DNA of 64,000 nt, taken from the NCBI GenBank assembly GCA_964019335.1, contig OZ025652.1, positions 124,001 through 188,000 of the forward strand, given 5' to 3'. Positions within the stretch are counted from its first letter, which is position 1; every line of letters begins with the position of its first letter. Position numbers and translations under genes: made by a program. Source of the stretch: Diplonema japonicum. Its lineage: Eukaryota; Protista; Euglenozoa: Diplonemea. The notes beneath the pieces were generated by a model. That model searched no databases and was not told the origin of the DNA. It worked only from the letters and a program-made list of their open reading frames with translations. Of the stretch, positions 52,820 to 64,000 are shown one piece after another.

Positions 52820-54497
52820 TTAGATCTCGTCCTTGGAAACAGGGTTAAGCTTCAGGACGAGTTTGTCGTGTAGCTCAGCGTGGTACGTATCCTGTTTGTG
52901 CATTAAAGCTGTGGTTCTTGTTACATACCTCAGAATCGCTGGCAGCCTCCTTAAGGGTCTTGAGAACGAAGGAAAATGAGAGAGACTGGAGCTTGAGCTG
53001 TGTGGTGAGGTGCTGCAGGAACCGCTTATCGTAGGTTGCAAGGCGGGCCACGATGGTGCTTACCTGCTGCATGATCAAATAGCCGTTCTCAAGACGTTCC
53101 AGTTCATGTTGTTCTTCAGAGAGCTTGAAGGGCTCACTGATCCTGCTCTCGCGTGCAGAGTGGGCCTCATCGTATGTTTGCAGCTGCACCACCGACTTCC
53201 CCAGCAACTCCACAGCTCGGTCTAGCTTCTCATACTCATTCTCCGAAAACTTTGCCGCTGCCCTCATCAGGTCATCCCCCTCCAAGTTTCTCAGCAGATC
53301 CAGCACAGCACTCACAGCATGGCCCTCTACCTCGTTCTGCTCCTCGCTCGTCCCATTCTTCAGAACCATCATCATAAACGAAAAGATAATACCCAGCCCG
53401 CCATCCTTCACGAAGTCGCAGCACCCTTCTTTGTTGTTCTGAACAGCATGCACCAGACACTTCAGGGAAGAGTGCTTCAGCACATGCTGCAGCCCTCGTG
53501 CAAATTTTCCAGGCGTCTTCTTCTTTTTCTTCTGGATCAACAAGAACAACAGTTTGAACCCTTGCGCCTCACGGAAGGCGGTCTTCCCCTTGCCAGACAG
53601 CAGGGTGGCAGCAAGGCAGTCATAAATATCCTTCACGTACTCAACCTCCTCCTCCTCAGAGGCGTCCCTCTTCTTGATGTATCTAGCAAGGCACTCCAAG
53701 AGGGCATGCACGCCGTTAATCCTGTCCTCCGGCTGCAGCGCCACAGGCAGGCCTGTCTTGTCGACCATCACGTTTGGGAAACACTCTCCCAGCTCAGGGG
53801 ATGTCTGGAGCATGGAGGACAGGAGCTCCGCAGAGTAGCTCTTTACTTCGTCAAGTTCCTTGTTCTTCAGGAGGTTTCTCAGTAGGAAGCCGGCCAGCTG
53901 CTCGCAGGACTTCTTGTCGTGCTCGAAGCTGAAAATCTCGGGTACAGTCTCCATCAGGTTCTCAAGCACACTGAACACGTGCAACACGCCTTCTTTCTCA
54001 TCTTCGGACACACCGGACAACCTCTCTAGCACAGACATGAGCCGTCCCAGAATTGCTTTCTTCTTCAGTTCCTCGTGGAGGCACATGGCCGTCTCGTCCT
54101 CGGAGACGATGCTCCCTTCCGTGAGCTCGCTCAGCAGCGTCATCGTCGAGCAGAGGATGTCATTGTTCTCGTGCATCGTGAGCTGCATCAGCGTCTCGAC
54201 AAGACCCATCTTGATGGCCAGCTCGTATTCTGCGGGGTTCACTGCAATCAAGGTCGCCTTCTCGATCTCCTCATCTAGTGCGAGCTCGCTTTCCATGAAC
54301 TTGTCAGGCTGGTCGCCGTGCTGATCCCTCTTCTTGATGTTTTCTTTCATTTTCGCTTTCACCCCTGCAACCAGCTTCTTCACCAGTGTCACAGGATCCA
54401 GGTTTGCATCGTCGTCTTCGGCCACCCCGCCATCAATCTTCCTGCGACGGGCATCGGAAACGTCGGTCTCACCGGCAGGCCGTTTTATGCCTGACAT
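52820..54497 (-). CDS. CTNNBL1: Beta-catenin-like protein 1 (Prp19 complex); intron 52892..52928
   Basis: PDKFMESELALDEEI, HENNDI, YSAELLSSMLQ, KFSENEYEKLDR, LERLENG. Confidence 0.9.
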
Positions 54498-55344: not shown

Positions 55345-56892
55345 TCACTGACGGTCTTCGGCTTCTGCCTCCTCCTCCTCCTTCTCTTTTGCCTTTGCGG
55401 CCACTTCGATAAAGTCCCCGTCCTTGATCCGGTAGGTGTGGATGTGTCGTTCGTGTGTAGTGAGGGACTGGCGCTCATGTGGCGTCCCAGCTACCTCAGG
55501 ATCCACATGAGTCAGGACCACTGAAGTAGGGTCAAGACTGAAGGGCTTGCACAGCACGCTGTACAGCACAGCCACCGTCTGCCGCACGTTCACCACAGCC
55601 GGCGTTTCCTGCTTCAGAAACAAGTACCGCACTGTCACACACGCTGTCAGCTTCGGGGACATGTCTATGTCCACCAACGGCTGCAGCTTCCCGTGGACCT
55701 TGGAGAGTTCGTCCCACACCTTCGGCGGGTCTTCTGCATCGTGGTAGTACCTCACGAGGAACCTCTCTGAGTCGATGCGCTCGTTCTTCGTCACGACGCC
55801 CCTGTTAAACACCTCCAGGGTGGGCACCCTCGCCACCATGAGGCACCTCCTCTCATGTTCTGTCTGCTTGTTGGTCAGTGGTGTGTCCGACATGGCCAGC
55901 TCCCTCACTCCCATTGCTGCCAGTGCGTCCACCGACTCCCAGTCTGCGATAGCCGTCTTCCTCAAGTATAAGCATTTCAGCTTGGGCGGCACCGGCACAC
56001 CACTTGTAACGGACTGCAGAGGGTTTCCTGACAGGTGCAGGGACGTCAGCTCTCCCAACCCGCTCAGCCCTTCGCAGACATCGTTCCAGCTTTGAACTTC
56101 GTTGTTGTCTAACCGCAAGGTCTTCAAGGCAGGGAGGTCCTTCAGCCATATGTTCTTGTACTTGTTGTTGCTGCAGTTTAGCTCCGTCAAGGTAGGGAAT
56201 AAGGTGGCAAGGCTGACCACTTCGTTCCACGTGAGGTTGGTGTCTGTGAGGGTCAGCGAGGTGAGGGGTGGTGAATCCTGAGCTGCGAGGACCTTCCCGC
56301 AGTCTTCGGTGAGGGGCTCGAAGTGGTTTCCAGCAAGGCTCAGCACAGTGAGGCGAGGGAGAGAACCAAGGACATTGGCGACTTCGGCCCAAGAAGACCA
56401 CAGCGTGTAGGAGAGGGAGAGGTCGGTGAGGCTGGGGAAGTTCGAGAAGAGGGCACCGCAGGTGCTGACGCGCATCCCGCTGGCGCTGACGTTGACGAGC
56501 TTTGAGAAGACGCCGTTGCTGTCCCTTTGGACGGCCTTCGGGAGGTGCACGTTCATAACACGCGTCTTCACCTCGTACATCTTGTTGTACTCATCAGACC
56601 TGTCCAGCAAGCTCTTTGCGTGCAGCTCTGCTGTTTCGTACTTTGCGACAAGCGCTGAACTGAGGTCCCCACCTGTGCGGAGCTTCCCCTCCTTGATGAA
56701 AGACGAGCTTTTGGGTGGCGCTGTGAAGTAGCGTTTCCCGAATATCTCTCCATCGTACTTACCACCCTCGCACTTGTCCCATTCGACGCCTGCGTACACT
56801 CCATTGTCTGGGCTGTTTTCGACTGTGCCGTGGAAGCGGACCGTGCCACGGACGGAGGTGGCGGTGTGCTCGACACGGGTGTTGGGCAGCAT
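55345..56892 (-). CDS. TBCE: Tubulin-specific chaperone E (CAP-Gly + LRR + ubiquitin-like)
   Basis: GTVRFHG..YAGVEWD...GKYDG...KRYF, LRRs, ERIDSERF, C-terminal Y.IKDGD. Confidence 0.9.
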   Translation of the reverse strand: MLPNTRVEHTATSVRGTVRFHGTVENSPDNGVYAGVEWDKCEGGKYDGEIFGKRYFTAPPKSSSFIKEGKLRTGGDLSSALVAKYETAELHAKSLLDRSDEYNKMYEVKTRVMNVHLPKAVQRDSNGVFSKLVNVSASGMRVSTCGALFSNFPSLTDLSLSYTLWSSWAEVANVLGSLPRLTVLSLAGNHFEPLTEDCGKVLAAQDSPPLTSLTLTDTNLTWNEVVSLATLFPTLTELNCSNNKYKNIWLKDLPALKTLRLDNNEVQSWNDVCEGLSGLGELTSLHLSGNPLQSVTSGVPVPPKLKCLYLRKTAIADWESVDALAAMGVRELAMSDTPLTNKQTEHERRCLMVARVPTLEVFNRGVVTKNERIDSERFLVRYYHDAEDPPKVWDELSKVHGKLQPLVDIDMSPKLTACVTVRYLFLKQETPAVVNVRQTVAVLYSVLCKPFSLDPTSVVLTHVDPEVAGTPHERQSLTTHERHIHTYRIKDGDFIEVAAKAKEKEEEEAEAEDRQ

Positions 56893-56995: not shown

Positions 56996-57478
56996 TCACT
57001 TCACCACTGTGGTGAGCATCATGGCCTGAAACTCGGCGAACGACACGATCCCATCCTTATCGCTGTCGGCCACCTCGATCATCTCCTTTAAAAGCTCGTC
57101 GTTCGGGTTCTCGCCGAGGGACTTCGCCACTTCTTTGAGGTCGTGGATAGTGATGTGGCCTTTGTTTTTGTCGAAAAGATGGAAGGCTTTCAGTATCTCC
57201 TCCGGTGAGTCCTTTTGAGCCATTTTCGCTTTCATCATTTTGTGGAATTCAGGATAATCTATGCAACCGTTGCCATCAGTATCTATCTCCCTAAGAAGTT
57301 TCTCGATATCAGCACGGGAGCTGTCACTGAAGCCTAAGCCTTTCATTGCCAACTGCATTTCTTCAGCATCAATTTCTCCGCTGTGAGACTGATATTTCTT
57401 TCTTTACACGTCATACCTTCCGTCTGCATCGAACAGGTTAAACGCCTCCTTTATTTGGTCATCTGTTAGACCTGCCAT
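56996..57478 (-). CDS. Centrin, 148 aa; intron 57381..57416
   Basis: IKEAFNLFDADG|SGEIDAEEMQLAMKGLGF, DTDGNGCIDYPEF, EEILKAF, VAKSLGEN, DSDKDGIVSFAEF. Confidence 0.92.
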
Positions 57479-58544
57479 ATTTTCTTTTTTCCGATTTTCC
57501 CCCCTCTCTTCCCCTTCCTGTTGTGAAATTGAGGAATTGGGCAATTGGTTACATAAAGAGAACCGAAGAAAACGAAGGAGAAAGAAAAAAAAAATCACCC
57601 AATACTCCTTCCCACTTCTTTCTGTGTTGTTTGTTGTGAGGGGGAAGTTGTCTACCCGATTACTGCTATCCGTGTGAGGGGGTACAAGAATGTGACGAAT
57701 CCCCCCCCCCTTCTTTTTTGGTAAAAGGCGGTGGATTCTTTGTGGGATTTCTTGGTCATTCCCCGCCAACAATTTGGATTCTTTTTTTTTTTTTTTTTTT
57801 TTTTATAATGTTCTACTTCAAATTTTAACTTCCTGTCCCGTAAGAAAAGGGGTCCTCAACAAAAAAAATGTAGTTTTTTTTTTTTTTTCATTACTATTTT
57901 CATTTTTGCTATTTAGTTTTCTTCTCGAGGACCGCACCCCTTTTTTTTTATTCTTCGGGGGAAGCAAAACAAACGGGTGAACTGCTAAGACCAGACAGGC
58001 CTAACAGAACATCTACTCTTTTTTTTTTTTCATTTCTTTTTTTTTTAAAATCCCTTCTGAAGAAGGTAACTGTATGGAGGGATAAAGAAACAGACTGCTG
58101 AAGAAAAAAAAAAAGGAAATTCTTTTCCCCCTCTTCATCGTCCCTCGAAAGATTATAATAAGATGTACCCAAATATTATAAAAACGTTCAAATCCCTGAG
58201 AAGCGGGGAACACCCGAAGTACTTCCAACCCAACCTCCGAAGGGAGATGAAACACGCTTGGATACAGGTCCCCCTCCCCCCCCCCCCCCCCCCCCCGCAA
58301 ACTAGAAAAGAAAGAAAAAAAACGCAAAATCTTCAAAAAAAAAAAATACTACAAAGTGCGAGAGTAAGTGGAAATGTAAAAAAGAAAAAAAGAAAAAAAA
58401 GAAAACGCCAGATGGGAGAGGAAAAAAAAAAAAAAAAAAAAAAAAAAGAAAGAAAGATGGACCTTCTCAAGATCGAGAGATATGTATCTATTTCAACTCG
58501 GTTTCTCTTTTTTTTTTTTTTTTTTTTTTTTCTTTCCTTTAAAA

Positions 58545-59223
58545 CTACGCCATCCCATAGGAATCAGCTTCACGACCTGCAGGGCTGCCATCATTCTGGT
58601 TGTTGAACGTTTCTAGGAAAGGAACGTTAGGATGCTCAGTTTGTCCAGCGTCCGGGTTGCTCTTATGGTTCCCCTTGTTCACAAAGAACGACATCCCGGT
58701 TGCTTCTGCTGCACGCTTGATGTCGGCAGCCTTCTTTTTCCGCAACCCGCTCTTAAGAGTCAGGATTTCCATGTAGCAGTCTCGACGAATAAAGTAGGTA
58801 GCCACCCAGTCTGTCCATGACAATTGCCCTTGATCTTCCTTATCGATAAGTGGAGGCAGGCCTTCAATAACAACTTTTGCGGCTCTTGATTTTGTGTTCA
58901 ATTTGAACGTTTCCTTTAGATGCTCTCTGTAATCATCTACTGTGATGTAGGCCTGACCCGCTTCATCGATCTTAATTAGTTTCATGAACTCATTCCTCAT
59001 TCCGTAAAATGATTCGTTGTCGATTCTGCCGTACACCTGGAAAGCTTGGTCGTACGATAGGTCGTTGGTCTCGTCAAGTTCCAAGGGGCACGTCGGGTCC
59101 TCGTCGATGAGGCCGATTCTCTCCATTCTTCGCTTGTCCTCAATCAAGGCAGCACGCTCTTTCCTTTCAGAAAGGAAGTCGATTACCTCATCACGCGACA
59201 GTGTTGTGGTCTTCGTACTGTGG

Positions 59224-59260
<37 letters not shown>

Positions 59261-59332
59261 CATACAGCACTTCAATCCAATCCCCCACGCTGATCAAACC
59301 GGTCCCTGTAACATCAATCAACGCAAAGAGCT

Positions 59333-59365
<33 letters not shown>

Positions 59366-62300
59366 TTAATGCCAATAATACCAGATCCAACTGCTCCTGG
59401 CTTAGTGTGACCCCAATCGTCGATTTGAACAACATTGAAAACTCCAGCTTGTCGAGACGGCCTGAGGGGGATAAAAATTCAATGGGGGAAGGAAAGGAAA
59501 AAGGGAAAACCTGTGCCTGACTTGTCGAACTTCTTAAACTCCGCCTCCAGATTCCTCCTGAACTGCGCCTTGTCTCCGTGGTGCAGCCTCGCAATGGAAA
59601 GAAGCCCTTCGATGGGCCCGTCACGAAGCAGCTCTGATTTGTGCTGTTCGAGCTGAGTGGACTTCCTTAAAATATAAACGAGAAGGATAGAGAGGATTAT
59701 CTATTAGGCGTTGTATGTCAATAGTTGGTAGCATACCCCACAGAGAAGCAAGTACACAAGGAACAGTAGGCACGATGAAACGATGGGCAACCACTTGTGC
59801 AAGAAAGTGATGACCTCTACCTTGCACGTCTGCGAGTAGAGCGCATTGGTGAGCTCACAGTCGCTCGGGCAGTTCTTAGGAGAGAAGACTCTGTCACAGG
59901 CTACGTTCCACCCACTGCACTTGAACTGCTTCTGTGCCGTGCATACAAGCCCCGGGTCGCTGCTCACCGCATCAGTCCACTGGTCCTCCAGATATGATTG
60001 CACTGAGCTGCCATTGTCGTCAGAGTTGTATCCCACATAATACAGCAGCACCACCACCACCATGATGGCCAAGATGATCAACAGTAATAAGCAGCTGCTG
60101 AAGATCAACGGTACGACCCTGTTCGGATTGGTTGTGTTGTGCGGTACATACTTCTTCGAGTAAGCGGAGGTCCACCCCACCGATCCTATCAGGAACAAGC
60201 CACCCGCCATTGCCATTCCCGCAATCAGCCCCAGCTTGGCCACCGCACCAACCTTTTGGTACAGCACGGCAAGGAACACGCACAACCCGATAGCACCCAG
60301 CACGAAGACAATGTTGGAGCTGACCAAAATACGTCCGATGTACCTGTGGTTGTGGTGGTGTGCATGGTCTGCATACTTGATAGGTTTGCTCATGGTGTCC
60401 TCCATGCATTTCTTGGGCTCGTCACTCATAATGATTAAAATAAAGTACAGGAAAATGAAGATGCACAACCCGGCCCCTACTAAGGCACCCCCAAGACCGA
60501 AGATCCAGTTCTCGATTGCCTTGACCGTCTCGTCCAGGTCGGTGGGGTTCTCGTAAGCTTTCGTTGTGTAGTTGAAGTTGCAGTTGCCGTCGGGGCTGGT
60601 GCATCTTGCGTAGTATCTGTACTGGGTAGGGGTCAGGGTCGCTCTGAACGGTCCGCTAGAAGGGCACGTGAACCGGGCGCTGTCCCCAAGTTCCGTGGTG
60701 ATATCGTTTAAGCTGTTGACAACTTCTATCTGCCAGACAGAGGTGGCGTTGTCCATGATCACCGGTCTGTGCTGCGGGAGGATGAAAGACGTCTTGTCGA
60801 CGACGCTGATGGACAGCGTGTGCCGCCCGACGCTCAGGCTGTTTTGAATGGCACTCAGGATGACATATGAGCCAGAGGCGACAGGGATCACCTGGTCATC
60901 CAGCATCCACGTCAGGTCGTACTCCCTCTCATCCCTGTTTGACAACACATGGAATAGCTTATCGTTGACAAAGAATGTGGCATTTTCACTTCCCACCTCT
61001 AACGACAGGAATGTAACCGTCTTCTCTGCGTGCGGACACGTAGGCCTCGTAAGGTTCAGACCGTTGCTGTACAGCTGCAGTGCCGACGCCTCTCGGCAAA
61101 CAGGACAGAGCGTCTTCCCTTCCACCTTTTCCATGATACACGGGGTCCCGTCAAGCTTACCTGGTTTGAAGAAGTTGCTAAAGTAGCAACCCTGCCCAGG
61201 TGTGGCAGGTACCTCCCCCTTGTCTATCCACCCCTGCCACCCGAGGTCCTTGGTCGACGCTGCACAGTTCTTTTCGCACAACGGAAGCGACGTGTCGTAC
61301 TTGTTGTTGAAAGGAGGGGCACAGTTCCTCCCTGACTCCGTGGCGGCCACGGTGTACTCATCGGATAGGTCGGTCATGGCATGCCCCAGCTCGTGGAATA
61401 ACAGAGACCTGCCCACCGGATCCGTTGCTTTCAGTGGCTTGGAGTACAGTGTTGCCATGCGGAGGGTGGTCGAGTAGAGGCCCGAGCCGCCGTAGTCGTT
61501 GTCATTCACCAGTACAATGACAACGGTGTTCACGAGGCCTGCTGATGCTGGCCCTGTGTCGGCCAGCGAGATGGTGCGAGGCCTGCTGCACTGCAGGATA
61601 CGTGCCGGCTCTGTAGACGAGCCTGTTCCATACGTGCAGCCAAGGTTGTTGTTGACAGTGACCCCGTTGGCAGGCTTGGAGGCACCTTTGTCGACTGAAG
61701 GCTCGAAGATGGAGAACGTGTTCATGGCCGGGAAGTACCGAGCAAGAGGGAATTGAGCAGCGTCGAACTGCAAGTAGTTAATAGCAGCCTCGACATCTGC
61801 ATTGAAGGTAGCATCCTCACCAGCAAGGTAGCCGGCGGAGAGGAAAACAAGGTTTTGGGTGTCTTTGGGGTCACCAATGCTCTGGATGGTGGTGAAAATA
61901 CCACCTTCGACTCCAGGGATGACTTCAGTGGGGGAAGCCTTGCGGGTGGGGAGGTGTAGGGGGGTGATGACAGTGCCGTTCAATGCCGTGAGGAGGAGGC
62001 CTGTTGCTTCGGTGTGGATGTGTAGTGTGTAGAGAGGCGTGTGCTTGATGAAGTGGCCTTTGGGAGTCATGCGGGCGGACTCCTTGCTGAGAAAAGAGGG
62101 GAGGTACCAGGGATTGGTGTCTTCGACCCATTCACTCCTGCTTCCAGGGTGCTTCTCGTCATCTCCGAACAAGCCCACTACGCACGTTTCCCCGTTAACT
62201 GTGTACTGCATGTTGTAGTGGTGCTGGCTTCCCACATCGATCCCCTTTCGGGCACCCCACACGTTCCCACACCAAGCTACATCTGTCTCGTGCTTACTCC

Positions 62301-62415
62301 GCTGCGAATGTGTTATCTTTATCTTCTCGACATCTCCCTCCAGGATTAAAAGTACCGACTCCTGCTCTGCGTGCACCACTGCCGCTAGCAGCAACGCTGC
62401 TAACACCCATTTCAT
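58545..62415 (-). CDS. Signal peptide + M64 (IgA peptidase-type) metallopeptidase + TM + tetraspanin-like 4TM + EF-hands (~1206 aa); introns 60344..60376, 60119..60151, 59701..59736, 59462..59510, 59331..59381, 59218..59265
   Basis: M64: NLVFLSAGY, VLVND..YGGSG, HELGH...LSDEY, CIM...LCPVCRE. Tetraspanin: TM1 Asn, QKQFKCSG, EC2 cysteines. EF loops DKSGTGRLDKLEF and DVTGTGLISVGDW. Spliced length is 3621 nt. Confidence 0.85.
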
Positions 62416-63011: not shown

Positions 63012-64000
63012 TTAAATATTTTGCACCACATCCTGGGGCTGCTCATGTTCGTCCTCGCTTTCAATCTCCGAGTAGACATCCATCTCCCCTTCGGGTTCGA
63101 AGCCATCGTGGTCCATGCAGTTGAACGCACCATCTCCATCCTCGTGTAGGCGCTTTCCTGGTGGCGGCAGGATATTCTGAACGCTTGTCACGGGCTGTCT
63201 TTCCTCCTCTTGAACGGCTTCCTGAAAATGTTTTCTTCCTTTTCGTTTTCTTTTTTTTGCATCAATACCTTGACATAACTCACGTAAACAACCAATGTCC
63301 CCTCCCTACCCGTCTTCAGCAAGGTTGAGTATGCTATCGAAGGCCATCTTCCGGGTTTGCATTCAGACGATTTGTATAAAACCTCTCCTTGCAGGTTGGT
63401 GATCCGGAACCAACACGGAATGGTACGGTGCTGCCGTTGAGATATTTGGAGTGTGACGTTGGTACGCTTTTCAGGGTGCACGTTGAACTTGATGCAGCAC
63501 ATGTCTTCCTGTGTAATGCGGGAGAAGCCCTTGCTGTAGTAAGGACCGATTCTGACGTTTTTGAAGTTCGGGATGGTCCAGACGTATTCCCCAAGGTTCC
63601 CTGTGTTGCTGATGGTATCGTTGTCGAACTGGAACCACACCACGCACGTGTCGTCGCCTGCCTTTTGGACGGCTGACGTGACGAGACTTTTTTGGCACAC
63701 GTTGTAGTGCCCGCACCTCTTGCACTCAGCAGGGATTGAGTGTGCGGTGTGCTGCCTCACCACCCTTCCCGTTGTCGTTCCTATAGCGTAAGTGTACTTC
63801 GGGATAGGCTTTGCTTTGTAATGTATGTAAAAGCCGACGATGTCTGCACCGTCCTTCTCCTCGAGCACCATGTGGAAGTGGAACTCCGCGCCCTTCTCCG
63901 TTGTCATCAGCTCGGAGTCCATGATCTTGAAACCCCGCTTCCTCTCCCACTCGTTAATCTCCCAACGCCACTGCCTCCCTGGAATCGTCTCCGCTATCGT
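63012..64000 (-). CDS. MATH/TRAF-like domain protein, 5' end beyond the window; intron 63222..63268
   Basis: WRWEINEW...FHFHMVL...VGFYIHY and YVWTIPNF...YYSKGF; the last exon gives an acidic tail ending DVVQNI*. Confidence 0.7.

What the first reader, a model, noticed from the sequence alone, without database searches (positions are those of the whole stretch)
58545..62415. Hidden single gene: M64 metallopeptidase fused to a tetraspanin and cytosolic EF-hands
Seen: the 903-aa and 359-aa track ORFs become one frame when a 36-nt intron (59701..59736) and a 49-nt intron (59462..59510) are removed. The first completes TM4 (LLCG|IILSILLVYIL) and the second completes an EF loop (FDKSGTG|RLDKLEF). 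The topology is self-consistent: signal peptide, extracellular HELGH...DEY protease (61353-61395), a TM helix, a four-helix tetraspanin-like unit with Cys-rich loop (CSG in place of CCG), then about 4 EF-hand-like loops in the cytosol. Established: M64 is mainly a bacterial family, and animal TspanC8 tetraspanins partner the ADAM10 sheddase non-covalently. Inference: a covalent, Ca2+-regulated protease-tetraspanin sheddase built from a bacterial-type peptidase.
Basis: partly seen in the sequence, partly recalled or inferred. Interest (0 to 1): 0.82.

Follow-up and report, generated by a model that had tools for sequence, protein, structure and literature searches.

The report
Protease-tetraspanin-EF-hand fusion gene
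This marine protist gene, split by four tiny introns, encodes one membrane protein that joins a bacterial-type zinc protease, a tetraspanin and calcium-binding EF-hands; I found no paper describing this layout, although about 95 relatives sit unnamed in public databases.

Summary

**Fusion.** The 903-aa open frame alone scores above Pfam's cut-offs for both Peptidase_M64 (73.5 bits) and Tetraspanin (53.7 bits). The protease-tetraspanin fusion therefore needs no splicing argument.

**Gene model.** The EF-hand tail is joined by four GT-AG introns, not two: 36, 49, 51 and 48 nt. The result is 5 exons and 1228 aa. It is collinear with Diplonema papillatum DIPPA_28173 (1225 aa, annotated "hypothetical protein").

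**Paralogues.** Three paralogues in the same genome carry M64, tetraspanin and above-cut-off EF-hands in one uninterrupted frame.

**Integrity.** The zinc motif is intact, and the six loop cysteines, with CSG in place of CCG, are invariant in a 12-sequence alignment. The predicted folds match solved M64 peptidases and tetraspanins.

**Family.** At least 95 clusters at 50% identity share the layout. Every named member is a diplonemid or a prokinetoplastid. About 19 have lost the catalytic glutamate.

**Function.** Sheddase activity and Ca2+ regulation remain inference.

**Limits.** No RNA junction evidence could be reached. The joined spliced protein was never searched or folded; exons were handled apart. 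First-stage notes of this scan flag two similar fusions elsewhere in this genome, probably two of these paralogues.

The parts
59737..62415 (-). Exon 1 (893 codons): signal peptide, ectodomain, TM0, and the tetraspanin up to most of TM4
   Evidence: ORF; exon phases; Pfam M64 and Tetraspanin
62368..62415 (-). Predicted signal peptide (aa 1-16, MKWVLAALLLAAVVHA)
   Evidence: Hydrophobic N-terminus; read from the sequence; no signal-peptide predictor was run
61906..62358 (-). N-terminal beta-rich domain (aa about 20-170), modelled with low confidence
   Evidence: AF2 strands. The Foldseek alignment to whole BF3526 chains spans about 480 columns, which suggests the N-domain is included
61036..61893 (-). 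M64 (igalysin) catalytic domain, aa about 175-460
   Evidence: Pfam 73.5 bits; phmmer to 4df9, E 5.7e-10, aa 181-443; Foldseek to 9qdi/4df9, E about 1e-17
61354..61395 (-). Zinc motif H341-E342-x-x-H345-x6-D352-E353-Y354
   Evidence: Invariant in 12 of 12 aligned family members. Aligns with HEFGHSFGGLADEY of BF3526. Motif definition taken from PMC12237041
61096..61140 (-). C426-x-M428 (candidate Met-turn) and C437-x-x-C440 (candidate structural zinc site)
   Evidence: C426, M428 and C440 are invariant; C437 is at least 90% conserved. Aligned to 'CRM...CPVC' of BF3526
60541..61023 (-). Beta-sandwich plus Cys-containing stalk (aa about 465-625; invariant W503, G530, D540, C605, C612)
60427..60507 (-). 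Extra transmembrane helix TM0 (aa about 637-663), which returns the chain to the cytosol ahead of the tetraspanin
   Evidence: Hydropathy; helix 628-674; a hydrophobic segment is present in all 12 aligned members
59668..60342 (-). Tetraspanin module TM1-TM4 (aa about 692-893 plus the first 11 codons of exon 2; intron 1 lies inside TM4)
   Evidence: Pfam 53.7 bits; AF2 pLDDT 91; the nine best Foldseek matches are all tetraspanins; CD53 and PRPH2 are the near-full-length VIA matches
59815..60027 (-). Large extracellular loop with six invariant Cys (C825, C833, C840, C849, C853, C864); CSG lies at 59911-59919
   Evidence: CSG found in 87 of 95 family representatives, CCG in 1
59701..59736 (-). 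Intron 1, 36 nt, G|GTATGC...TAG, in frame, holds two stop codons
   Evidence: a 12-aa gap in tblastn with P0001, P0003 and P0021
59511..59700 (-). Exon 2 (190 nt): end of TM4, the juxtamembrane segment and the first half of EF loop 1. It has no Met codon
59462..59510 (-). Intron 2, 49 nt, G|GTTTTC...CAG, phase 1, splits EF loop 1
59382..59461 (-). Exon 3 (80 nt): second half of EF loop 1 (the full loop DKSGTGRLDKLE spans 59442-59526)
59331..59381 (-).
   Evidence: a 17-aa gap in P0001, P0003 and P0021
59266..59330 (-). Exon 4 (65 nt): EF loop 2, DVTGTGLISVGD, at 59280-59315
59218..59265 (-).
   Evidence: a 16-aa gap in P0001
58545..59217 (-). Exon 5 (673 nt including the stop): helical linker, a degenerate EF loop, EF-like loop DKEDQGQLSWTD (58809-58844) and the C-terminal tail
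   Evidence: the tblastn segment with P0001 that spans exons 3-5 has 49% identity, E 3e-74; no Pfam hit for the exon on its own

Best explanation
Window 58545-62415 (minus strand) is one five-exon gene of a diplonemid. The organism is probably Diplonema japonicum. The gene encodes a protein of about 1228 aa with five membrane passes.

Shown by sequence and models:
- A signal peptide leads an ectodomain to the outside of the cell or the lumen of a compartment.
- The ectodomain has an N-terminal beta domain, an M64/igalysin zinc-endopeptidase domain with an intact HExxH-x6-DEY site, a candidate Met-turn and a CxxC zinc site, a beta-sandwich, and a disulfide stalk.
- An extra helix, TM0, brings the chain back into the cytosol. 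The following four helices can then adopt the normal tetraspanin topology, with the six-cysteine large loop outside, next to the protease stalk.
- The C-terminal tail of about 330 aa is cytosolic and carries two EF-hand pairs. Only the first loop is canonical.

Inferred:
- The protein is an active, membrane-tethered ecto-metalloprotease.
- Its built-in tetraspanin does in cis what TspanC8 tetraspanins do in trans for ADAM10, namely trafficking, placement in membrane microdomains and positioning of the active site above the membrane.
- Its tail couples this to cytosolic Ca2+ or to adaptor proteins.
- Substrates are unknown. They could be the cell's own surface proteins (shedding) or external or prey proteins.

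The 0.8 below is for the gene structure and architecture. I rate the cis-tetraspanin, Ca2+-coupled mechanism at about 0.35.
For: One frame holds both domains above Pfam cut-offs.

Introns:
- All four have GT-AG ends and consistent phases.
- Their sizes (36-51 nt), the (G)/GTATG 5' site and the A-rich tract before the 3' site match what PMC12621601 reports for D. japonicum: median 41 nt, with A unusually the commonest base in the tract.

Collinear relatives:
- D. papillatum P0001 (1225 aa) is collinear across every junction, with gaps exactly at the in-frame introns.
- Transcript-derived P0003 (one 3708-nt transcript) and P0021 show the gaps at introns 1 and 3.

Paralogues in the same genome:
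- Six of seven M64 loci carry the tetraspanin in the same frame.
- Three of them (C19, C18, C72) also carry EF-hands above cut-off in one uninterrupted ORF.
- An identical copy of the C18 product is in the public collection (P0080).

Conserved residues: the catalytic residues and the loop cysteines are invariant in the 12-sequence alignment.

Folds:
- M64 structures 9qdi, 4df9 and 3p1v at E about 1e-17.
- phmmer to 4df9 at E 5.7e-10.
- The tetraspanin model has pLDDT 91, and its best Foldseek matches are CD53, CD9, CD81, Tspan15, PRPH2 and uroplakin.

Other:
- Exon 2 has no Met, and upstream of exon 1 there is a long polypyrimidine tract followed by AG.
- GC3 is 0.56-0.74 in all exons.
Against: - No RNA from this organism covers the junctions. 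No protein at least 90% identical to this gene is in the collections at 497-1580 aa or at 197-628 aa for the tail.
- Introns 3 and 4 are in frame and stop-free, so retained-intron isoforms cannot be excluded.
- EF loops 2-4 deviate from the canonical pattern, and exon 5 alone has no Pfam hit.
- The Gly of the igalysin motif HExxHxxxGxxD is Asp here.
- The tetraspanin's Foldseek E-values are weak (0.009-0.4), and the VIA Z of about 10 lies inside the range the tool reports for unrelated helical proteins.
- About 19 of 95 family representatives lack the catalytic Glu, so catalysis is not essential to every member.
- Protease activity, localisation, Ca2+ binding and contact between the loop and the stalk were not tested.
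Confidence: 0.8

Rival explanations
1. The architecture is the same but the job is different. It is a nutritional or digestive surface or food-vacuole protease. The tetraspanin is only a stable membrane anchor or sorting signal, and the EF-hand tail serves Ca2+-triggered exocytosis or trafficking rather than control of catalysis. No shedding of the cell's own proteins is involved.
For: - The family is expanded: seven loci here and at least 95 clusters overall.
- One paralogue lineage dropped the membrane part and gained CUB domains, which looks like a secreted enzyme.
- Bacterial M64 enzymes are secreted or surface proteases (PMC12237041).
- D. papillatum is described as having an expanded repertoire for degrading external substrates (title and keywords of PMC10161547).
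Against: - A plain anchor would not need an invariant six-Cys extracellular loop plus W813.
- Cytosolic tails vary between signalling-type modules, namely EF-hands, PDZ and a WW-like motif.
- Pseudo-protease members keep the tetraspanin and the tail.
Confidence: 0.3
2. There are two separate genes. An M64-tetraspanin protein ends at the TAA inside 59701-59736, and an independent EF-hand protein is made from a spliced-leader acceptor near 59665.
For: - The 36-nt segment holds stop codons.
- The stretch 59700-59655 is pyrimidine-rich and followed by AG.
- No RNA data are available for this locus.
Against: - The pyrimidine-rich stretch encodes the conserved end of TM4 (IILSILLVYILRKS), which aligns without a gap to P0001, P0003 and P0021.
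- Exon 2 has no Met, and the 359-aa frame starts at GTG.
- A start at the first internal Met would cut EF loop 1.
- Relatives and paralogues encode all modules in one transcript or ORF.
- Intron 1 has the species-typical G|GTATG 5' site.
Confidence: 0.04
3. It is a non-catalytic surface receptor or adhesin. The M64 fold binds a ligand, and the tetraspanin and EF-hand part signals inward.
For: - About 19 of 95 family representatives have replaced the catalytic Glu or a His (HMxxH, HQxxH, HYxxR, RExxK) yet keep the whole layout.
- Some solved M64 proteins have a flap that blocks the cleft (PMC12237041).
Against: - This copy, its D. papillatum orthologue and all five tetraspanin-bearing paralogues here keep H, E, H, D, E and Y, the candidate Met-turn and the CxxC site.
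Confidence: 0.08
4. It is a decaying gene. The interruptions are damage rather than introns, and only a truncated product, or none, is made.
For: No public protein is identical to this locus, whereas paralogue C18 has one.
Against: - All four interruptions have GT-AG ends and species-typical size and composition.
- There are no frameshifts or stops within exons.
- The tail keeps 49% identity to the orthologue, E 3e-74.
- GC3 in the exons stays at 0.56-0.74.
Confidence: 0.04

Closest known systems
Diplonema papillatum DIPPA_28173 (P0001, 1225 aa, 'hypothetical protein')
   Same: Probable orthologue: 46% identity over 97% of exon 1, collinear through the tail, with the same Pfam set of M64, Tetraspanin and EF-hand.
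   Different: It is uncharacterised and unnamed. The window copy has a His-rich insert in the TM0-TM1 loop and an 11-aa insert in the TM2-TM3 loop.
M64 / igalysin metallopeptidases (Bacteroides BF3526, PDB 4df9 and 9qdi; BACOVA_00663, PDB 3p1v; Thomasclavelia ramosa IgA peptidase)
   Same: The catalytic fold, the HExxH-x6-DEY zinc site and the 'C-x-M ... CPVC' segment (PMC12237041).
   Different: The bacterial enzymes are lipoproteins or sortase-anchored or secreted proteins, without a tetraspanin or EF-hands. Sequence identity is only 17-18% to the Bacteroides structures and 10-11% to IgAse in the structural alignments. The motif's Gly is Asp here. Substrates are unknown, and there is no reason to expect IgA.
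ADAM10-TspanC8 'molecular scissor' (human ADAM10-Tspan15, PDB 8esv)
   Same: A metzincin-clan ectoprotease paired with a tetraspanin in the same membrane. Both chains of 8esv appear among the structural matches: 8esv_A to the ectodomain at E 3e-3 and 8esv_B to the tetraspanin at E 0.15.
   Different: That complex is two non-covalent polypeptides, with an ADAM (M12) protease rather than M64. Here there is one chain with an extra linking helix and a Ca2+-sensor-like tail. This is an analogy, not homology of the assembly, and the functional likeness is untested.
Canonical tetraspanins (CD53, CD9, CD81, PRPH2, uroplakins)
   Same: Four TM helices, small and large extracellular loops, and a Cys-rich large loop. 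Pfam score is above the cut-off, and these are the best structural matches.
   Different: CSG replaces the hallmark CCG. The protein has N-terminal protease and C-terminal EF-hand extensions, whereas tetraspanins normally have short cytosolic ends.
Leishmanolysin / GP63 (M8) of kinetoplastids
   Same: A surface zinc metalloprotease of Euglenozoa (from my own knowledge, not tested here).
   Different: A different family (M8), with a GPI or single-TM anchor and no tetraspanin or EF-hands.

Membership tests
Peptidase M64 (igalysin, metzincin clan) | Match to the Pfam PF09471 profile above the gathering score | tested here: met
   73.5 bits against a cut-off of 26, aa 177-361. The same holds in all six paralogues.
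Peptidase M64 (igalysin, metzincin clan) | Zinc motif HExxHxxxGxxD followed by E and Y (PMC12237041) | tested here: met
   H341, E342, H345, D352, E353 and Y354 have the right spacing and are invariant in 12 sequences. The Gly position is Asp in the window copy and G, N or D in relatives, so this one position deviates.
Peptidase M64 (igalysin, metzincin clan) | Met-turn and a Cys-based structural zinc site below it | tested here: inconclusive
   C426-x-M428 and C437-x-x-C440 are conserved and align to 'CRM...CPVC' of BF3526. The geometry in the model was not inspected because no coordinates were available.
Peptidase M64 (igalysin, metzincin clan) | Catalytic-domain fold like the solved M64 structures | tested here: met
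   Foldseek to 9qdi, 4df9 and 3p1v at E 1e-17 to 6e-16, and to IgAse 9i4z at E 6e-11. The model's pLDDT is 75-90 in this domain.
Peptidase M64 (igalysin, metzincin clan) | Metal-dependent endopeptidase activity | not testable with these tools
   Needs expression and an assay.
Tetraspanin | Match to the Pfam PF00335 profile above the gathering score | tested here: met
   53.7 bits against a cut-off of 32.1, aa 696-900. Five paralogues score 37-57 bits.
Tetraspanin | Four TM helices, with a short first and a long second extracellular loop and both ends cytosolic | tested here: met
   Hydropathy. AF2 helices at 686-719, 724-756, 764-797 and 864-892, with loop helices between. The orientation follows from the signal peptide plus TM0 and is inferred, not measured.
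Tetraspanin | CCG motif in the large extracellular loop | tested here: not met
   It is CSG (C833-S834-G835), invariant in the 12-sequence alignment. 87 of 95 representatives have CSG and 1 has CCG.
Tetraspanin | At least four conserved Cys in the large loop | tested here: met
   Six Cys are invariant in the 12-sequence alignment (C825, C833, C840, C849, C853, C864). In the 55-sequence alignment five stay invariant and C853 is at least 90% conserved.
Tetraspanin | Fold like the solved tetraspanins | tested here: met
   The domain model has pLDDT 91. The nine best Foldseek hits are all tetraspanins: CD53 at TM 0.57 and E 9e-3, then CD9, CD81, Tspan15, PRPH2 and uroplakin. In VIA, PRPH2 (Z 10.7, 193 aa) and CD53 (Z 10.1, 178 aa) are the highest-ranked near-full-length matches; uroplakin (181 aa, Z 9.1) is a third. 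The statistics are modest.
EF-hand | Helix-loop-helix pair with a 12-residue Ca2+ loop; Pfam EF-hand_7 above the cut-off | tested here: inconclusive
The window's raw frame scores 22.2 bits against a cut-off of 30, because introns split the pair. The collinear orthologue P0001 scores 49.3 bits at the same place. Loop 1, DKSGTGRLDKLE, is canonical. Loops 2-4 deviate.
ADAM10-TspanC8-type protease-tetraspanin partnership | The tetraspanin's large loop contacts the protease's membrane-proximal domain and controls its trafficking or substrate choice | not testable with these tools
   No coordinates or predicted aligned error (PAE) map of the full model were returned. This needs a structure or mutagenesis.

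The most novel reading that the evidence does not exclude
Diplonemids and prokinetoplastids evolved a single-chain 'molecular scissor'. A metzincin protease acquired from bacteria is permanently welded, through an adaptor helix, to its own tetraspanin and to a cytosolic Ca2+ sensor. Intracellular Ca2+ would then gate surface proteolysis, or the reverse could happen: substrate binding outside is signalled inward. The pseudo-protease members would be the receptor-only end of that spectrum. This would be an independent, covalent counterpart of the animal ADAM10-TspanC8 system in one of the ocean's most species-rich groups of eukaryotes.
Probability: 0.3. Interest if true: 0.8.

Novelty: new variant of a known kind. 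Interest (0 to 1): 0.6.

Why it matters
Tetraspanins are known as non-covalent partners that steer membrane proteases such as ADAM10. A natural protein in which the protease, the tetraspanin and a Ca2+-sensor-like tail are one chain would be a simple system for asking what a tetraspanin does for a protease.

The family is large, with at least 95 clusters at 50% identity. All named members come from diplonemids and prokinetoplastids, and diplonemids are abundant marine protists whose cell-surface biology is almost unknown. A subset has lost the catalytic glutamate, so enzyme and receptor roles can be compared within one family.

D. papillatum has an orthologue (DIPPA_28173), so experiments could start there.

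There is also a practical lesson. In this genome, tiny A-rich in-frame introns are translated as lysine runs and hide true gene models.

Tried and rejected
1. RNA proof of the junctions. A search with the exon-5 part of the tail for transcript-derived fragments of 197-628 aa found nothing. Junction evidence therefore rests on comparison only.
2. The protein-atlas search could not take the query or a homologue.
3. A profile search with alignment A1 in the word-indexed database added only two named bacterial M64 proteins and no new taxa with the fused layout.
4. Literature. No paper in the held library links M64 with tetraspanin in a relevant sense. Neither word occurs in the main text of the D. 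papillatum genome paper or the euglenozoan comparative paper.
5. NCBIfam gave nothing useful for exon 1.
6. Foldseek with the whole 893-aa model did not list tetraspanins, because the ectodomain fills the list. The tetraspanin was therefore folded alone.
7. An alternative 5' site for intron 4 (GT at 59261) was rejected because it breaks the frame and the alignment. The site at 59265 gives ...EVL|TKTTT..., which matches the orthologue without a gap.
8. Exons were translated and analysed apart, and natural continuous orthologues served as proxies.


Full report
**What is there.** On the minus strand, ORF 59704-62415 (903 aa, starting at ATG) is followed by ORF 58545-59624 (359 aa, starting at GTG). 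The 903-aa frame alone matches Pfam Peptidase_M64 (73.5 bits, cut-off 26, aa 177-361) and Tetraspanin (53.7 bits, cut-off 32.1, aa 696-900). The protease-tetraspanin fusion is therefore encoded in one uninterrupted frame and does not depend on any splicing model.

**Gene model.** Reading the sequence and checking phases gives five exons and four GT-AG introns.

| Feature | Coordinates (minus strand) | Length |
|---|---|---|
| Exon 1 | 62415-59737 | 2679 nt |
| Intron 1 | 59736-59701 | 36 nt |
| Exon 2 | 59700-59511 | 190 nt |
| Intron 2 | 59510-59462 | 49 nt |
| Exon 3 | 59461-59382 | 80 nt |
| Intron 3 | 59381-59331 | 51 nt |
| Exon 4 | 59330-59266 | 65 nt |
| Intron 4 | 59265-59218 | 48 nt |
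| Exon 5 | 59217-58545 | 673 nt, including the stop |

- The coding sequence is 3687 nt, or 1228 codons.
Introns 3 and 4 are in frame, stop-free and A-rich, so the naive frame reads them as lysine runs.
- tblastn with the D. papillatum protein P0001 opens gaps of 12, 17 and 16 residues exactly at introns 1, 3 and 4. It changes frame at intron 2.
- Transcript-derived relatives P0003 (Sulcionema-type, from a single 3708-nt transcript) and P0021 (Artemidia motanka) show the gaps at introns 1 and 3.
- The introns fit the published description of Diplonema japonicum introns: median 41 nt, a (G)/GTATG 5' site, and, unusually, A as the commonest base before the 3' site (PMC12621601).
- Earlier notes of this scan name the organism D. 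japonicum. I did not prove this. However, one window ORF is an exact EukProt entry, and the intron style agrees.
- Exons were handled apart, and natural continuous orthologues served as proxies.

**One gene or two?**
- Exon 2 contains no Met codon. The pyrimidine-rich stretch that could pass for a trans-splice acceptor encodes the conserved end of TM4.
- A long polypyrimidine tract followed by AG lies upstream of the exon-1 ATG.
- Within the same genome there are seven M64 loci. Six carry a tetraspanin about 1.5 kb downstream in the same frame.
- Three of these paralogues (contigs C19, C18, C72) also carry EF-hands above Pfam cut-offs after TM4, all in one uninterrupted ORF. The C83 copy carries a weaker EF-hand match plus a PDZ domain.
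- The C18 product (1272 aa) is present, letter for letter, in the public collection as P0080. P0029 is 98% identical to the C83 product.

**Anatomy.** In alignment A1 (12 sequences) the following are invariant:
- H341, E342, H345, D352, E353 and Y354. This is the igalysin/M64 zinc motif defined in PMC12237041, except that its Gly is Asp here.
- C426-x-M428 and C440.
- Two stalk cysteines, C605 and C612.
- In the tetraspanin loop: W813, C825, C833-S-G835, C840, C849-P850, C853 and C864.

phmmer against the PDB aligns the motif and the 'C-x-M ... CPVC' segment with BF3526 (4df9, E 5.7e-10). Hydropathy and AlphaFold2 give a signal peptide, an extra helix TM0 (about aa 637-663) and four further helices.

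Because a tetraspanin's N-terminus is cytosolic, TM0 is the topological adaptor that lets an extracellular domain precede it. A hydrophobic segment at this position is present in all 12 aligned members.

The tail has four EF-like loops. Loop 1, DKSGTGRLDKLE, is split by intron 2 and is canonical. The others deviate at ligand positions.

**Structure.**
- The exon-1 model (pLDDT 69 overall, 75-90 in the catalytic domain) matches solved M64 peptidases: 9qdi, 4df9 and 3p1v at E about 1e-17, and IgAse 9i4z at E 6e-11. ADAM10 and ADAM17 follow only at E about 3e-3.
- The tetraspanin folded alone (55-row alignment, pLDDT 91) has tetraspanins as its nine best Foldseek matches. CD53 leads with TM 0.57 and E 9e-3, followed by CD9, CD81, Tspan15 from the ADAM10 complex, PRPH2 and uroplakin.
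- In the Foldseek-independent search, PRPH2 (Z 10.7, 193 residues) and CD53 (Z 10.1, 178 residues) are the highest-ranked near-full-length matches, with uroplakin (181 residues, Z 9.1) as a third. These statistics are modest for an all-helical domain. Together with the Pfam score I take them as support.

**The family.**
- phmmer against 1.84 billion representatives gave 999 hits, 63 of them below 1e-30.
- Of the proteins retrieved, 95 non-redundant representatives have M64 followed by a tetraspanin, always in that order. Of these, 87 have CSG and 1 has CCG. 56 have at least one canonical EF loop after the tetraspanin.
- Named members are all diplonemids or prokinetoplastids. The diplonemids are D. 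papillatum, Artemidia, Rhynchopus and Lacrimia, plus entries tagged 'Sspe' and 'Hpha'. The prokinetoplastids are Papus ankaliazontas and PhF-6. One D. papillatum member is annotated 'Caltractin'.
- In a FastTree of the M64 domains, 52 short non-fused proteins form one clade with 99% support. This clade includes the bacterial sequences from the first search, one of them named (Xanthomonadaceae); the Spirillospora and Pyrinomonadaceae M64 proteins were found later and are not in the tree. All fused proteins lie on the other side, together with nested fragments and a secreted M64-CUB lineage. This is compatible with one origin of the fusion. It does not prove that, and the tree is unrooted.
- About 19 representatives have lost the catalytic Glu or a His yet keep the layout. 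The window copy is intact.

**How it probably works.**
- Shown: the domain order, the intact active-site residues and a self-consistent topology.
- Inferred: a membrane-tethered ecto-metalloprotease whose own tetraspanin positions or sorts it. Its cytosolic tail links it to Ca2+ or to adaptors; paralogues swap in PDZ and WW-like modules.
- The conserved six-Cys loop and the varied signalling-type tails argue for more than a passive anchor.
- The secreted CUB variant and the family's expansion keep a nutritional role open.

**Novelty.** Searches of the held literature found no description of an M64-tetraspanin protein. The D. papillatum genome paper does not mention either domain in its main text. 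The sequences themselves are public but unnamed. I rate this a new variant of known kinds, of moderate to high interest.

First-stage notes of this scan flag M64-tetraspanin-EF-hand fusions on two other pieces of this genome (s1-867669 and s1-866421). They are consistent with the C19 and C18 paralogues I analysed.

Noticed in passing
G000 contigs C83, C19, C20, C18, C72 and C4 (loci L008-L013): Six paralogues of the window gene have different tails. C83 has an EF-hand plus PDZ, C19 an EF-hand pair plus a WW-like motif, C18 about five EF-hand pairs, and C72 one EF-hand pair. The C20 tail is interrupted by an A-run, probably another intron. C4 has no membrane part but carries CUB domains and is probably secreted.
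   Followed up: partly
Family representatives P0047, P0059, P0089, P0097, P0100, P0102, P0105, P0107, P0108, P0110, P0111, P0129, P0136 and others: About 19 of 95 fused family members have replaced the catalytic Glu or a zinc His (HMxxH, HQxxH, HYxxR, RExxK) while keeping the tetraspanin and tail. They look like pseudo-proteases, perhaps receptors.
   Followed up: partly
window 59331-59381 and 59218-59265; also L010 near the end of its ORF: Tiny in-frame introns made of A or T runs translate as poly-Lys or poly-Phe and merge into ORFs. This is a general trap for gene calling in this genome.
   Followed up: partly
window 57404-57480 (minus strand): The next gene downstream starts with MAGLTDDQIKEAFNLFDADG, a centrin- or calmodulin-like first exon that stops at a probable intron. 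Pfam gave no hit on the raw frame.
   Followed up: no
window 55345-56892 and 52875-54497 (minus strand): The neighbours are a CAP-Gly plus leucine-rich-repeat protein and a CTNNBL1 homologue (297 bits). Thirty-two of the 38 window ORFs of at least 200 aa, and all the long non-overlapped ones, lie on the minus strand, as expected for a one-directional gene array.
   Followed up: no
window 60343-60375 (aa 681-691) and aa 755-765: The window copy has a His-rich insert (HAHHHNH) in the cytosolic TM0-TM1 loop and an 11-aa insert in the TM2-TM3 loop. Both are absent from all aligned relatives.
   Followed up: no
window 63188-63922 (minus strand): The upstream 244-aa ORF has no Pfam match and no exact public copy.
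   Followed up: no
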